Positions 38,501 to 63,742 of a DNA stretch of 64,000 nt are shown one piece after another. This stretch comes from Basidiobolus meristosporus CBS 931.73. Its lineage: Eukaryota > Fungi > Basidiobolomycota. The stretch spans positions 62,001-126,000 of the forward strand of contig MCFE01000079.1 in assembly GCA_002104905.1 (NCBI GenBank), given 5' to 3'. The notes under the pieces are model-generated. The model had not been told where the DNA came from, ran no database searches, and was given only the letters and a program-made list of their open reading frames with translations. A program made the translations under genes and the position numbers. The first letter of the stretch is position 1. Each line of letters starts with the position of its first letter.

Positions 38501-41500
38501 TATTTTGTTGAGTGGGAGTGTTGTAATTATTAAGTTGTCACCAAAATATTCATGCTAACTTAGTCACATAGACTTTATTTTTTGAATAGCAGTTTGTCCT
38601 GACCAAATTTCTTGTTGGGACTTAGAATATTTTCACCAAATTGTCAGGTATCCAGATTATTATTTTTCTCAAAGTCGTCCAAAAGACCCCAAACCTTGCA
38701 CACATATTCTTGGGACCTTCCTTAACAGACTCTACACGTTTGTTTCCTCTACTTTATCAAAAGTATAAATACCATACTTTTGATCAATAAATCTACAAGT
38801 GAATAACATGTAAATCCTCTGGTTCTCCACATCACTTCCAATACTCCTCAGAATATTGCAACACACAATCCCTTGGAAGAATGCTATAATTGTATCAAGT
38901 GTTTTGATACTGAAGCCAGTGTACCAGGAGCTAAATATGGAGCTGTTAGATGTGCTATCACTCTGTTTAAGTCTCAAAACAGTGCAAGAATGTATTATAC
39001 TAATTCAGCAAAATCAACTCAAGAAGATTCTACTGCCAGCCAAAAGAGTGAAGCATATAATTTCAAGCCTGATTGAAGTATACAACCAAGCAACAGTTGG
39101 TCAGTACACAGCTAAGAGCCACTCAGAAGATAACATAGTACTTTATACTTGTTATATATATATCACTTATTACAGTGGGAGAAAACACTTGGTGATATTT
39201 AACTTCTCTGGATCAGATCAGAAGAATTTTGATTGATCAAATCACTGCCAGGCTACACAACTCAAAATACTGATATATTGGAGTCTGATACCAAAGTATT
39301 GATGAAGCTAGCTATCAAATGCAGTTTACCTGATCAAATTTGGTCAACTCTGTCAAAAGTTATGACTGATCTAAGTGGATGCCAATTTTGATTATTTCAC
39401 TTGCAAATAGTCAGATATTCTGGAACAATGATGCATGGAGACTCTTGTGCTCAAAAACACCGTGATCCCACCTGCAAGAAAGTCCAGAACCACCCCACAA
39501 AAGGAATTATCCCTGGGTCATCAGCAGAAAAAGAAAAGAAGAAAAAATGGAAAATACTACTACCGCAAACTAGGGTACTTCCCAAATGGAGCCAAAGCTT
39601 ATGTAGGCCATATTTGGACTATCTGGCAATGCAAATATGCTCTATAGAGCCTCTTGTGCAAAGTGTTCAAGCCAGAATCCCCAGAAGACCCTTGAAACCT
39701 CAACAGGATCTGTGAGATATTGTAGTATATATTGGAACAGATTATTTAATGCAGAAGTCTTGATGTCTGCTGTCTATGGAGCTAGAAGAAAAAGGTGCAA
39801 GGATCAACCAAGATGATTTTATGGATTCTGCAGACACTGAGAAGATCAGTTAGCCTTTCAAACCAAGCTCAAGGTTGAAAATAACTATCAGGAGAATAAG
39901 GATAATAAAAGCCTGTGTTAAGGAGAATCTCACTTCTGAAAAAGTGCCAATATCTATTCTGCAAGTATATCCTGGTAAGACAAAAGCAGCTGTATCAGTC
40001 CAAATCAGTAGAAGCACTCTAAGAATAGCTATCAAACAACCTATGGTGTTGTCCAATACCAAACTGGGTAAATTAAGAAGCAAATGGACTTTGAATCTAC
40101 CACAAATGTGTTGTAAAAGTTTGGAATTCCACCTAAATATTCACCTGACTTAGTCACTTAGATCATCACCTTCAAATCCTAGAGAATACTGACCAAATTC
40201 CTTGTTGGGATTTACTTAGAATATTTTCACCAAATACCAGGTACCCAGAACATGAAAATTCTCAAAGTTGTCCAAACAGCCCCAAACTTTGCACACATGT
40301 TCTTGGGACCCTCCTTAACCTATTCTACATGTTTGTAATGCCAAGACCAGGTAAAAGTATAAAAACTACTTTTACATTCAATAAATCATTAAGTGAAAAC
40401 CACAAAATCTACTTGTTCTCCAAATCACTTCCAATATCTCCAAGACTCTTACAACAGGTTATGAGCCCCAAGCTGTCACTCTCTGCAATGTCTACTACTG
40501 CAATTACTGGAATTTTTTCCTCTGCTGAAAAGTTGGATGGATCTAACTACCAAGTGTGGAAGGTGAAGATGAAGATGCTGCTACAAGAAAGGGGCCTTTG
40601 GGATATTGTCATGGGTGAAGAATGCCCTCCTAAAAACATGGGAGAGGAAGCCTTAAAGTACCAGAAGAAAGATCAAAGTGCCTTTAACTGCATTTGCCTT
40701 AATGTTAAGGACAAATTGCTAATTCAATGCTCAAGAGCAAAAACGGCAAAGAATGCCTGGAAAGCATTAGAGGACACCTACCAGTCATGTTCAGCTGCTA
40801 AGAAGATGTATCTGAGACAAAAATTCTTTACTACAAAGATGCTGCCAGGAGAAGAAATGAAAAATCTAATTAACAGAATTACCCTGCTGGTAGATGAGAT
40901 GGAATCTGTGGGCTTACCAACTACTGATGAGGATGTGACAGTTACCATCCTGAATAGCCTGACAGACAAGTTTCAGGGCCTTGTATCAGCCCTAGAGTTC
41001 AGAACTGAAGATTTGACCTTAAATACATATATGAAAGGCTCCTGGATGAAGAATTAAGAAAATCAAGCGCCAATAAGAAGGAAGAAGAAAATGCTTTAAT
41101 AAGCAATGATAACCAACAAAGGAGGTACCCAAGACCCTACAAAGGCAACAGCAACCTGTTTTGTAACTACTGCAAAAGGAAAGGACACACATCAAACTGG
41201 TGTCTCAAAAAGAAAGATAATCAGCAAAAGAAGCCTGAATATGGAAATGCTGCAACAACTGAAGATAGACTATTCATATCTGCACTAAATATGACCACAA
41301 ACAAGGATTCTGAGACGTGGTATATTGACTCTGGAGCATCTCAACACTTTACACACCAAAAAGGACTTTTTACCCAATATCAAGAAATTCCAATTAAGAA
41401 GGTTTTCATGGGTGATGATAGAACACTTGATGCAGTGGGAGAAGGAACTATTCAAGTAAACCTTAGAAGCAGTGAAGGAAGCCATACACTGACCTTTAAA

Positions 41501-54245: not shown

Positions 54246-54548
54246 TAGTGCGATATGCTTGGGCTATACGAAGCGACCGAGGGGACACTTCAGTCATTGA
54301 CTTTTAGGATTTATCACCTCAAGTACCCAAGATCACATAAACCAAACATGACGATATTGTTTCGAATGATGATTTAATTCGGGTTTAACTATAACCAACC
54401 ATCTGATATATCTTGTGGGATGCCATATCAAATGAATTGTCGAGTAAAGAGAAAGAGAAAAAAAGATCAATGGAGCTGATAGAAACAGTCGCGAAGATAA
54501 CCAAACACTTAAGCACTCGTTGCAGTCCGTTTGGTACTTTTTGACGAA

Positions 54549-55413
54549 ATGACCTTGACCAGAACTGACGGACGCAAAAACGACGAAATCCGCCCACTCT
54601 ATTGTTCGCAGGGTCTCTTGAACCGTGCCGATGGCTCAGCTCGCTTTGAACATGGTCCGTTTCAGTATCCCCCCAGCAGACGAGTTTTCTTTAACACCCA
54701 TCCCTTCCACTCTCTAGGAAAATCTGCAGTGCTTTGCGGTATCAACGGTCCAATGGAGGTCAGGCTTACCCAAGAAAAGCTGGACAAGGCCACTTTGGAG
54801 GTAGTCTTTCGGCCCATGATTGGCTTACCTAGCACGCGGGAAAAGAAATATGAAGCGGTGATCCGGCGCACTTTTGAAAACGCCATCCTAACTGGCCTGC
54901 ACCCTCGTACTCTAATCCAGTTGAATGTACAAATTTTGTGGGACGACGGCTGTGTAAGTAGATTCACCCCGCCGGAAGGTTTTTTCACCAGTGAAATCTA
55001 ATCGGACCTTAACTGATATCCAGGCTCTTGCCACCGCCATCAATGCCGTTACTTTGGCGTTAATCGATGCGGGAATCCCCAGTAAAAGTATTATCGCAGC
55101 CTCTACCTGTTTGATCACTGACGCAGGTGAATTGATTGTTGATCCCACCGCAAAGGAGCTTGAGGTAAGCGTCTAGTAAAAAGAGCTATGAGCGCACTTG
55201 CTAACGAAATATTCCTAGGCCCCTCATTCATCCCTCCATACGTTTGCTTTCGATAGTGCCACACAAGAGGCAGTGTTTTCGGAGTCCATAGGTTCTTACA
55301 CTGAGGAGGAGTATTTCAGATGCCTGGATATTTGCTCCGCAGCAAGCGTCAAAGTCCAAGGCTTCCTGAGAACTGCACTGGAAAAAAAACTCGAGAAAGA
55401 AAACCAATACTAG
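54549..55413 (+). CDS. RRP46: Exosome RNase PH-like subunit Rrp46, 225 aa (exons 54549-54654, 54718-54953, 55024-55164, 55219-55413)
   Basis: RTDGRKNDEIRPL...LNRADGSARF...INGPMEV...HPRTLIQLNVQILWDDG...AINAVTLALIDAGIP...IVDPTAKE. Confidence 0.92.
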
Positions 55414-62639: not shown

Positions 62640-63298
62640 ATGATGTTTCCCTCACTTGATAAAAACCCTGCTTACCATCTGTTCCCTTACCATAAACCGA
62701 GCCGGCCAAGAACACTAGGTTTCGCCGAGTTCCATGCCGCTCACTTTCCCTCACGCGTTCACTTTTTCAGAGGCCTTGTGAATCCGTCCTTCACTGGTCC
62801 GTCCAATCCCAGCCAGCCTTGGCCGCAACATGATCGCCGAGTAGCGGAGCCATATGCTGACGACCAAGAGGACATTCCCGACGAGTTTACAGACGGCGAG
62901 GAAGGTGAAGAACTCAGCTTCCAGCTAAGCGAAGAAACTATTGCGATGTTCGCGTTCTCCGAGAAACACCGTTTAGAACGTAAGTGGTTGATTATCTTGG
63001 GCCTTGTATATCGCTTGTGGGATATTAATTCGTGAGTTCTGCAGGAGAGGCCCAGAGGCTAGTAGAAGCGGAAGCCCAGCGTAAGGAAGACTCGGAGGCG
63101 CTCACAGTAGCCTTGAACTCACTTCCTACAATGACCTACAATCGCACCTCACCAGAAGAGTATTCTCAGCTCTATGGTCCCTCTGGCACCAAAATCGCCA
63201 TGCTGGAGGCCACGTTAAACTTTGAGTACGAGAGGGGATGTTCTGAAGATGGGGTGAGGACTCCAAGCTTATGGCCAGTATTACCACTCCGTCTCTAA
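62640..63298 (+). CDS. GEMIN8: Gemin8-like SMN-complex subunit, 197 aa (exons 62640-62979, 63045-63298)
   Basis: F..SEKHR.ER and LYG....IAMLEATLNFEYERGC......WPVLPLRL match the Gemin8 C-terminal signature. Confidence 0.82.
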
Positions 63299-63329
63299 AA
63301 AGGTAAATTTATTTTCTGTAAGAATGCAC

Positions 63330-63473
63330 TGCGCGGTGATGACAGAACTCATCCTTGTTCTAAGAATGGAAGTGATTGAGCGATCCGACGTCTTTGGACA
63401 GCTCCATATGGTTGGCAATTCAATCACCTTCATGGCGAAGAAAAAACTGAGTGGGCCTTGAATTCTGAGCGCA
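63330..63473 (+). ncRNA. Box C/D snoRNA candidate inside a 3' UTR intron (63303-63526) of GEMIN8; predicted U6 A70 2'-O-methylation guide
   Basis: Box C GTGATGA (63336-63342), box D CTGA (63465-63468), terminal stem TGCGC/GCGCA with canonical K-turn spacing, and putative D' CTAA (63360) and C' GTGATTG (63372). Host intron: donor AG|GTAAAT, branch ACTAAC (63505-63510), acceptor CAAG. Confidence 0.75.
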
Positions 63474-63742
63474 TTCGTTACCCTTCACCCTAACCAAACC
63501 CATCACTAACTCTGTTCTTTACCAAGGGCTATCATTGTAAATAGTATATATCATAAATGAATAAATTCCTGATTAGAAGCCAATAAATTATGCACCTTTT
63601 TGTACAAAAAATTGATCCTCTTGATACACGCGACATCCACAAACATCAAGTTTGGTATATTTGATCAAGAGTTACTCCATTGTTACTTTACACTGGTTTT
63701 TTCTTTGTCCAGCTAGTAGTGTCATAGCTTTCTTCACGACAA

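What the first reader, a model, noticed from the sequence alone, without database searches (positions are those of the whole stretch)
63303..63526. Box C/D RNA in a GEMIN8 3' UTR intron whose guide predicts U6 snRNA Am70
Seen: a 224-nt intron starts 4 nt after the GEMIN8 stop; most introns here are 50-70 nt. It contains box C (GTGATGA, 63336), box D (CTGA, 63465) and a 5-bp terminal stem with exact K-turn geometry, including the A63342-U63464 pair. TCATCCTTGT (63349-63358) lies one nt upstream of a D'-like CTAA. Knowledge: U6 contains 5'-(A/G)CAAGGAUGA-3' in its internal stem-loop. By the D+5 rule, T63355 pairs with the A equivalent to human A70 (S. pombe A64), a known U6 2'-O-methylation site. 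U6-guiding C/D RNAs tend to be longer than typical ones, and this one is about 140 nt. Inference: a U6-modifying snoRNA is co-expressed from the gene of an snRNP-assembly factor. From memory, the S. pombe A64 guide was described only recently and no clear vertebrate A70 guide is established, so this could be a new family member or a missing orthologue. Caveat: the D' box is non-canonical and the guide overlaps a small AGAAC/GTTCT hairpin.
Basis: partly seen in the sequence, partly recalled or inferred. Interest (0 to 1): 0.88.

Follow-up and report, generated by a model that had tools for sequence, protein, structure and literature searches.

The report
Intronic snoRNA predicted to methylate U6
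A Basidiobolus fungus carries, in an intron just after the stop codon of its Gemin8-like gene, a conserved box C/D small RNA whose guide should direct methylation of one adenosine in the catalytic stem-loop of U6; RNAs for this site are already described in fission yeast and mouse, so it is a new family member, not a new kind.

Summary

**What supports a real RNA gene**
- The same predicted 3' UTR intron exists in Basidiobolus ranarum, where the host protein is only 56% identical over exon 1.
- There, box C, box D, the terminal stem and a 20-nt block holding the guide and the CUAA D' box are kept (20 of 20 identical). Flanking intron sequence is 27-32% identical.
- A 68-nt internal hairpin is kept through compensatory changes; 7 of the 24 pairs counted changed on both sides.

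**Predicted function**
- The guide UCAUCCUUGU pairs with the U6 sequence ACAAGGAUGA.
- The fifth nucleotide upstream of D' falls on the adenosine mapped as Am64 in S. pombe.

**What is already known**
- S. pombe sno530 guides Am64 (2023).
- Mouse Snord23 was proposed as the Am70 guide through its D' box (2025).

**What is new**
- A canonical fungal version of this guide.
- Its host, an intron 4 nt after the stop codon of a Gemin8-like gene.

**Not shown here**
- No RNA evidence: none of the four runs tried laid on the locus.
- This genome's own U6 could not be read.
- Methylation is untested.

This scan has noted other intronic snoRNAs in this genome, but none at this locus.

The parts
62640..62979 (+). 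Gemin8-like host gene, exon 1
   Evidence: ORF. Its only homologue by word search is B. ranarum K7432_010542, 56% identity.
62980..63044 (+). Host gene intron 1, 65 nt, GT..AG
   Evidence: Sequence. The reading frame continues across the junction, and the B. ranarum gene has an intron at the same place.
63045..63298 (+). Host gene exon 2 with the Gemin8 C-terminal domain; stop TAA at 63296-63298
   Evidence: Pfam PF15348 GEMIN8, E 3e-5, 24.6 bits, below the 29.7-bit cutoff. It shares 47% identity over 57 residues, reaching the C-terminal WPVLPLRL, with P0007, a protein carrying PF15348.
63303..63526 (+). Predicted 3' UTR intron, 224 nt, starting 4 nt after the stop
   Evidence: GTAAAT 5' splice site, CTAAC branch site and AG. 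B. ranarum has the same arrangement and a 226-nt intron at L001 5674-5899. No RNA-seq support was obtained.
63330..63334 (+). Terminal stem, 5' arm (UGCGC)
   Evidence: Pairs with 63469-63473. Four of the five pairs are kept in B. ranarum, one as G-C to G-U.
63336..63342 (+). Box C, GUGAUGA
   Evidence: Identical in B. ranarum.
63349..63358 (+). Antisense guide UCAUCCUUGU, inside a 20-nt invariant block (63346-63365). U63355 is the fifth base upstream of D'.
   Evidence: The block is 20 of 20 identical to B. ranarum while the intron flanks are 27-32% identical. The guide is complementary to ACAAGGAUGA of S. pombe U6, and U63355 lies opposite Am64 (oligonucleotides). Duplex energy is -14.8 kcal/mol against -8.2 +/- 2.4 for shuffled targets; 20 of 2000 shuffles did as well.
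63360..63363 (+). D' box, non-canonical CUAA
   Evidence: Invariant in both species. Assignment as D' is an inference from position.
63366..63433 (+). Internal hairpin between D' and C' (three stacked helices)
   Evidence: Predicted by folding. Nineteen pairs were counted; 7 changed on both sides and 3 on one side between the two species. In controls with the 3' partners slid by 1-3 columns, 0-3 pairs changed on both sides and 25-42% of cells were paired, against 92% for the whole 24-pair structure.
63438..63459 (+). Conserved 3' block GAAGAnAAAAyUGAGUGGGCCUU; candidate degenerate C' box UGAGUGG at 63448-63454
   Evidence: 20 of 22 identical to B. ranarum. The C' reading is an inference. The 5 nt next to box D (63460-63464) differ between the species, so no conserved D-box guide is evident.
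63465..63468 (+). Box D, CUGA, preceded by the conserved U63464
   Evidence: Identical in B. ranarum.
63469..63473 (+). Terminal stem, 3' arm (GCGCA)
63506..63510 (+). Branch-site consensus CTAAC, 36 nt after the 3' end of the RNA
   Evidence: Conserved in the alignment. In B. ranarum the distance is 41 nt.
63560..63565 (+). AATAAA polyadenylation signal of the host mRNA, downstream of the intron
   Evidence: Sequence. There is no AATAAA inside the intron.

Best explanation
The stretch encodes an intron-borne box C/D small nucleolar (or Cajal-body) RNA of about 144 nt, at 63330-63473 on the + strand. It sits in an intron that begins 4 nt after the stop codon of a Gemin8-like gene in a Basidiobolus fungus.

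**Inferred pathway**
1. The host pre-mRNA is spliced.
2. The lariat is debranched.
3. Exonucleases trim back to the particle assembled on the box C/D K-turn.

**Inferred function**
- The 10-nt guide next to the internal D' box (CUAA) pairs with ACAAGGAUGA in the U6 internal stem-loop.
- Fibrillarin then 2'-O-methylates the second A of CAAGG.

**Other parts of the RNA**
- A structurally conserved hairpin separates D' from a degenerate C' box.
- The spacer next to box D is not conserved, so the RNA is probably a single-guide RNA.

**Shown versus inferred**
- Shown: sequence and structure conservation between two species, and guide complementarity to the published fission-yeast U6 sequence.
- Inferred: splicing, accumulation of the RNA, the target in this organism, and the methylation.
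For: - **Motifs and geometry:** all motifs are in exact K-turn geometry. Chance expectation is 0.19 per window.
- **Orthologous locus:** the B. ranarum locus is syntenic (RPL19, RPS18, Gemin8, TAF5). It has the same intron 4 nt after the stop and the same RNA.
- **Conservation by segment:** guide and D' block 20 of 20; 3' block 20 of 22; stem and box C 11 of 13; box D and stem 8 of 9; intron flanks 27-32%; internal hairpin 37% in sequence.
- **Structure:** 7 of 24 pairs changed on both sides, 92% of cells paired, against 25-42% in slid controls.
- **Target register:** the guide is complementary to the S. pombe U6 oligonucleotide UGGCCCUGCACA(Am)GGAUGACA, with Am opposite U63355, the fifth base upstream of D'.
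- **Precedents:** sno530 deletion abolishes Am64 (PMC10484740). Snord23 has the same box C, short spacer, CAUCCUUG, 2 nt layout and was assigned to U6-Am70 through its D' box (PMC11863803; consensus shown).
- **Processing route:** the splicing-dependent pathway is described in PMC10557570.
- **Genome context:** intronic snoRNAs are noted repeatedly elsewhere in this genome (unchecked notes).
Against: - No transcript evidence. No RNA run was listed for the locus, and the four runs tried laid nothing on it.
- The duplex is only 10 bp.
- The D' box is CUAA, not CUGA, and the C' box is degenerate.
- No Rfam family reaches its gathering score.
- rRNA targets could not be screened, because no rRNA sequence of this organism or a relative was held.
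- Only two species are available, so the invariant blocks cannot show covariation with a target.
Confidence: 0.7

Rival explanations
1. It is a real box C/D RNA, but its natural target is not U6. The target would be an rRNA or another RNA with a better match to the 14-20 nt invariant block, or the RNA would be an orphan or chaperone-type snoRNA.
For: - The invariant block (AACUCAUCCUUGUUCUAAGA) is longer than the 10 nt that pair with fission-yeast U6.
- A second invariant block of 22 nt has no assigned role.
- rRNA could not be screened.
- The D' box is non-canonical.
Against: - The match places a known, conserved U6 methylation site exactly at the fifth position upstream of D'.
- Two experimentally linked guides for this site, sno530 and Snord23, share the same layout just after box C.
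- Part of the extra conservation is the D' box itself.
Confidence: 0.15
2. The RNA is real, but it is not released by splicing of a 3' UTR intron. It would be made from its own promoter, or cut out of the 3' UTR by endonucleases.
For: No RNA evidence for the 63302/63527 junction. The B. ranarum annotation gives no UTR.
Against: - The GTAAAT 5' splice site 4 nt after the stop, the CTAAC branch site and the AG are kept in both species, while the surrounding intron sequence has diverged.
- The host polyadenylation signal lies downstream of the intron.
- The RNA ends 36 and 41 nt before the branch site in the two species.
- By eye, I saw no TCCCAY-type snRNA promoter motif, as noted for this genome's independent RNA genes, just upstream in the printed sequence (motif from the unchecked notes). 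No pattern search was run.
Confidence: 0.1
3. It is not a stable RNA. The conserved blocks and hairpin would be a cis-regulatory element of the Gemin8 3' UTR intron, for example controlling splicing or mRNA stability, and the C/D motifs would be fortuitous.
For: No expression data. Only two species were compared.
Against: Box C, box D, the U before box D, the stem with a G-C to G-U change, and a guide-plus-D' block are exactly the parts conserved. A generic regulatory hairpin would not explain this pattern.
Confidence: 0.05

Closest known systems
Vertebrate SNORD23 (Rfam RF00603), proposed guide for U6-Am70
   Same: - Box C is followed after a short spacer by CAUCCUUG, then 2 nt, then the D' box. 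The same U6 adenosine therefore falls at the fifth position upstream of D'.
- The 5' 30 nt are almost identical to the Rfam consensus.
- Both are intron-encoded.
   Different: - It scores only 12.6 bits against a gathering score of 64, and SNORD23 is not among the weak hits for the B. ranarum copy.
- It is longer (144 against 110 nt) and has a large internal hairpin.
- The host gene differs: it is not Gemin8 in vertebrates (own knowledge).
- Homology as opposed to convergence on the same target is not shown.
S. pombe sno530 (SPNCRNA.530), guide for U6-Am64
   Same: - It targets the same adenosine in the same U6 sequence, and its deletion removes the methylation.
- Its RT-PCR forward primer begins with a C-box-like ATGAGGA, followed 9 nt later by TTGTCATTC. 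This suggests the guide also lies just after box C.
   Different: - sno530 has a one-off C box and 12 nt of pairing with one non-Watson-Crick pair. Its predicted fold does not bring boxes C and D together.
- The Basidiobolus RNA is canonical: perfect boxes C and D, a terminal stem and 10 Watson-Crick pairs.
- The full sno530 sequence and its genomic context were not available here.
Other U6-specific box C/D guides (mgU6-47/snoZ30, N. crassa CD11)
   Same: They are box C/D RNAs that direct 2'-O-methylation of the Pol III-made U6.
   Different: They target a different U6 position (A41 in S. pombe, A47 in mammals) with different guides.

Membership tests
Box C/D snoRNA | Box C (RUGAUGA) near the 5' end and box D (CUGA) near the 3' end | tested here: met
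   GUGAUGA at 63336-63342 and CUGA at 63465-63468, identical in B. ranarum.
Box C/D snoRNA | A short terminal stem that sets boxes C and D into a K-turn | tested here: met
   A 5-bp stem with a 3-nt bulge and the A63342-U63464 pair. The stem is kept in B. ranarum with one G-C to G-U change. Chance expectation is 0.19 per window.
Box C/D snoRNA | Internal D' and C' boxes | tested here: inconclusive
   CUAA at 63360-63363 and UGAGUGG at 63448-63454 are invariant between the species, but both depart from consensus.
Box C/D snoRNA | A guide of at least 10 nt ending 1-2 nt before D or D', with the target nucleotide opposite the fifth base upstream | tested here: met
   The guide forms 10 Watson-Crick pairs with S. 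pombe U6 ACAAGGAUGA, and U63355 lies opposite Am64. This genome's own U6 was not available.
Box C/D snoRNA | A stable RNA bound by fibrillarin, Nop56, Nop58 and Snu13 | not testable with these tools
   No RNA run was listed for the locus. Four runs laid nothing.
SNORD23 (RF00603) | Reaches the Rfam gathering score | tested here: not met
   12.6 bits against 64, E 9.6, covering only the 5' part. No SNORD23 hit for the B. ranarum copy.
SNORD23 (RF00603) | A D'-associated guide CAUCCUUG in the register that selects U6-A70 | tested here: met
   Consensus alignment. The D' positioning at Am70 is stated in PMC11863803.
U6 Am64/Am70 guide (functional class: sno530, Snord23) | Loss of the RNA removes the methyl group on that adenosine | not testable with these tools
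   This needs a deletion followed by primer extension or RiboMeth-seq.
Gemin8 (PF15348), the host gene | The C-terminal Gemin8 domain | tested here: inconclusive
   Pfam gives 24.6 bits, below the 29.7-bit cutoff. Even so, it shares 47% identity over the last 57 residues with a PF15348 protein, and both end in WPVLPLRL.

The most novel reading that the evidence does not exclude
The Basidiobolus RNA, S. pombe sno530 and vertebrate SNORD23 would be one ancient family, present since before fungi and animals split, that methylates the U6 internal stem-loop. The canonical Basidiobolus form would be the link that makes the aberrant sno530 intelligible.

In addition, its hosting in the Gemin8 gene would couple output of an snRNP-assembly factor to U6 modification. 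The second invariant block (GAAGAnAAAAyUGAGUGGGCCUU) would be a further functional module. It could make a second contact with the GGCCC strand of the U6 stem-loop, or be a binding site for a LARP7/Pof8-type adaptor.
Probability: 0.2. Interest if true: 0.6.

Novelty: new member of a known kind. Interest (0 to 1): 0.45.

Why it matters
Methylation of this adenosine in the U6 internal stem-loop is conserved from fission yeast to human. In human cells it promotes installation of m2G72 and affects splicing (PMC13109388).

Its guides were found only recently:
- The yeast guide is structurally odd.
- The vertebrate assignment fell below the significance cutoff in the chimeric-read data and lacks a knock-out.

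A canonical guide with the same register in an early-diverging fungus has three uses:
- It supports the idea that the D'-guide assignment is right and old.
- It gives a clean sequence pair for building a covariance model to find the family in other fungi.
- It adds an annotated snoRNA and a 3' UTR intron to two Basidiobolus genomes.

The Gemin8 host is a neat association. With only one genus showing it, it may be coincidence.

Tried and rejected
- **Rfam, gathering scores, whole window:** no match.
- **Rfam, E-value mode:** only sub-threshold hits, namely SNORD23 in the window and snoR69Y, TtnuCD17 and others in B. ranarum. None is evidence of membership.
- **RNA evidence:** no RNA run was listed for the locus. 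A second search with the neighbouring RPS18 gene listed 20 runs, but the best share of words was only 0.65. Laying X6, X13, X4 and X8 at 80% likeness gave nothing. This says nothing about absence.
- **More relatives:**
  - Word-based protein searches with exon 1 and with the B. ranarum protein found only B. ranarum.
  - A profile search of 1.84 billion representatives found three more distant Gemin8 proteins. Their loci (L002-L007) carry no such guide. The higher-scoring long proteins in that search matched only the EAEAQRKE coiled-coil stretch.
  - The metagenome pattern scan gave one hit (L008). It has no box D or terminal stem, and by my own rough estimate one such hit would be expected by chance.
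- **Second pattern match in L001 (2968-2987, minus strand):** it lies antisense inside the span of the RPL19 gene model and is taken as chance.
not conserved.
- **A conserved box-D guide:** rejected, because the 5 nt next to box D differ between the species.
- **This genome's U6:** earlier notes say it lies on another piece of the genome. No tool could fetch it.

Full report
**1. The observation**

- The host ORF ends with TAA at 63296-63298.
- GT follows at 63303, 4 nt later. AG is at 63525-63526, giving 224 nt. A CTAAC branch site lies at 63506-63510.
- Inside the intron, box C GTGATGA is at 63336-63342 and box D CTGA at 63465-63468.
- TGCGC (63330-63334) pairs with GCGCA (63469-63473).
- One nucleotide lies between the stem and box C and none after box D. 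This is the K-turn arrangement, with a 3-nt bulge and the A63342-U63464 pair.
- TCATCCTTGT (63349-63358) is followed by one T and then CTAA (63360-63363), so T63355 is the fifth base upstream of that D'-like box.

A scan for this exact geometry with a stem of at least 5 bp finds 0.19 cases per shuffled window on both strands. The real window has two. The second, at 40169..40008 on the minus strand, lies beside a copia-type gag ORF and was not pursued.

**2. The host gene**

- Exon 1 (62640-62979) and exon 2 (63045-63298) are joined across a 65-nt intron.
- The C-terminal part hits Pfam GEMIN8 at E 3e-5, below the curated cutoff.
- A profile of the C-terminal part found three proteins that match end to end at their C-termini. 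PF15348 hits are on record for all three, though only faintly for P0010.
- One of them, P0007, shares 47% identity over the last 57 residues and ends in the same WPVLPLRL.
- The stop at 63296 is therefore the natural end of a Gemin8-like protein, and the intron lies in the 3' UTR.

**3. The organism and its relative**

- The only close homologue is a hypothetical protein of Basidiobolus ranarum, 56% identical over exon 1.
- Its contig (L001) is syntenic: RPL19, RPS18, the Gemin8-like gene, and a TAF5-like gene.
- Earlier follow-up notes of this scan name the present genome Basidiobolus meristosporus. I did not verify this independently.

**4. Conservation**

B. ranarum has the same layout: stop, 4 nt, GTAAAT, a 226-nt intron, CTAAC, AG. 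In the alignment identity is strongly mosaic:

| Segment | Identity |
|---|---|
| Guide plus D' block, 63346-63365 | 20 of 20 |
| 3' block, 63438-63459 | 20 of 22 |
| Stem plus box C | 11 of 13 |
| Box D plus stem | 8 of 9 |
| 5' intron flank | 32% |
| 3' intron flank | 27% |
| Internal region, 63366-63433 | 37% |

The internal region folds into the same three-helix hairpin in both species.
- On the 24 pairs of terminal stem plus hairpin, 92% of cells are paired and 7 pairs changed on both sides.
- With the 3' partners slid by 1-3 columns, 25-42% of cells are paired and 0-3 pairs changed on both sides.
- The structure was derived from the window sequence, which favours it. The compensatory changes in the second species are still independent evidence.

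This is the signature of a structured RNA gene, not of a neutral intron.

**5. Architecture**

- The order is box C, a 17-nt spacer holding the guide, D' (CUAA), the long hairpin, a 14-nt A-rich linker, an invariant UGAGUGG that I read as a degenerate C' box, an 11-nt spacer, and box D.
- The five bases next to box D differ between the species (GAAUU against AAAAU). No conserved box-D guide is evident, and the RNA is probably a single-guide RNA.
- ACUCA just 5' of and within the guide can pair with UGAGU in the 3' block in both species. Because both are invariant, this can be neither supported nor dismissed.

**6. The target**

- Table S3 of Porat et al. 2023 prints the S. pombe U6 oligonucleotide UGGCCCUGCACA(Am)GGAUGACA and chimeric probes covering the same region.
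- The guide 5'-UCAUCCUUGU-3' forms ten Watson-Crick pairs with ACAAGGAUGA, and the methylated A lies opposite U63355. The fifth-base rule therefore selects Am64.
- The duplex energy is -14.8 kcal/mol against -8.2 +/- 2.4 for shuffled targets.
- The same paper shows that deleting sno530 abolishes Am64. It also shows that sno530 is non-canonical, with a one-off C box and with C and D not juxtaposed.
- In mouse, chimeric eCLIP linked the orphan Snord23 to U6 and placed its D' box so as to select Am70. The site is highly methylated in RiboMeth-seq, although the interaction peak fell below their cutoff. An earlier CLIP study had seen SNORD23-U6 chimeras but predicted another position.
- The only snoRNA model among this window's weak Rfam matches is SNORD23. 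Its consensus UGCCCagUGAUGAcACCAUCCUUGCUCC aligns with UGCGCGGUGAUGACAgaaCuCAUCCUUGUUCU. Box C, guide and register are the same, but the score of 12.6 bits is far below the gathering score of 64.
- The match is therefore a lead about function, not proof of homology.

**7. Likely mechanism**

- The RNA lies in the sense strand of a conserved intron. It ends 36 nt (window) and 41 nt (B. ranarum) before the branch site. The host polyadenylation signal is downstream of the intron.
- The likely route is the splicing-dependent pathway reviewed in PMC10557570: splicing, debranching, then exonucleolytic trimming to the assembled particle.
- From my own knowledge, an intron starting only 4 nt after the stop should not trigger nonsense-mediated decay under the 50-55-nt rule. 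The host mRNA could therefore remain productive.
- All of this is inference.

**8. What could not be done**

- No RNA run was listed for the locus, and contigs of four runs found through the neighbouring gene did not lay on it.
- This genome's U6 lies on another piece of the genome and could not be fetched.
- No rRNA was available to screen rival targets.
- More distant Gemin8 loci (a Glomeromycotina-like AT-rich contig, marine metagenome contigs and a transcript-like contig) have no such guide.
- The metagenome pattern scan gave one hit that looks like chance.
- Conservation therefore rests on two species of one genus.

**9. Verdict**

- A real, conserved, canonical box C/D RNA: about 0.9.
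- Intron-encoded in the 3' UTR of the Gemin8-like gene: about 0.8.
- Guide for the U6 adenosine equivalent to S. pombe A64 and human A70: about 0.7.
- It is a new member of a known kind. The function is already assigned to sno530, and provisionally to SNORD23.
- The new elements are the canonical fungal form, the conserved large hairpin and second invariant block, and the Gemin8 host.

Noticed in passing
L001:5526-5528 (B. ranarum), aligned with window 63154-63156: The B. ranarum Gemin8-like gene has an in-frame TAA where the window has GAA. The 46 codons after it remain 72% identical to the window and end in the Gemin8 C-terminal motif. The annotated 155-aa protein is therefore truncated. This could be an assembly error, a very recent mutation, or read-through.
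   Followed up: partly
window 40008-40175, minus strand: A second RTGATGA...CTGA arrangement has a 6-pair terminal stem, three of whose pairs are G-U. It lies just upstream of a copia-type gag ORF (40329-41057) and is probably chance or part of the element's LTR.
   Followed up: partly
window 63625-63680 and L001 6035-6100: Two short motifs upstream of the TAF5-like gene are kept between the two species in otherwise diverged intergenic DNA: ACGCGACAT and TTGATCAAGAG. They are candidate promoter elements.
   Followed up: no
window 63438-63459: The invariant block GAAGAnAAAAyUGAGUGGGCCUU has no assigned role beyond a possible degenerate C' box. Its GGGCC could pair with the GGCCC strand of the U6 stem-loop, but 5 bp is within chance.
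   Followed up: partly
window 54366-54569, plus strand: A third C/D-like motif pair (ATGATGA...CTGA, 4-bp stem, 200 nt apart). It is at the level expected by chance and was not examined.
   Followed up: no
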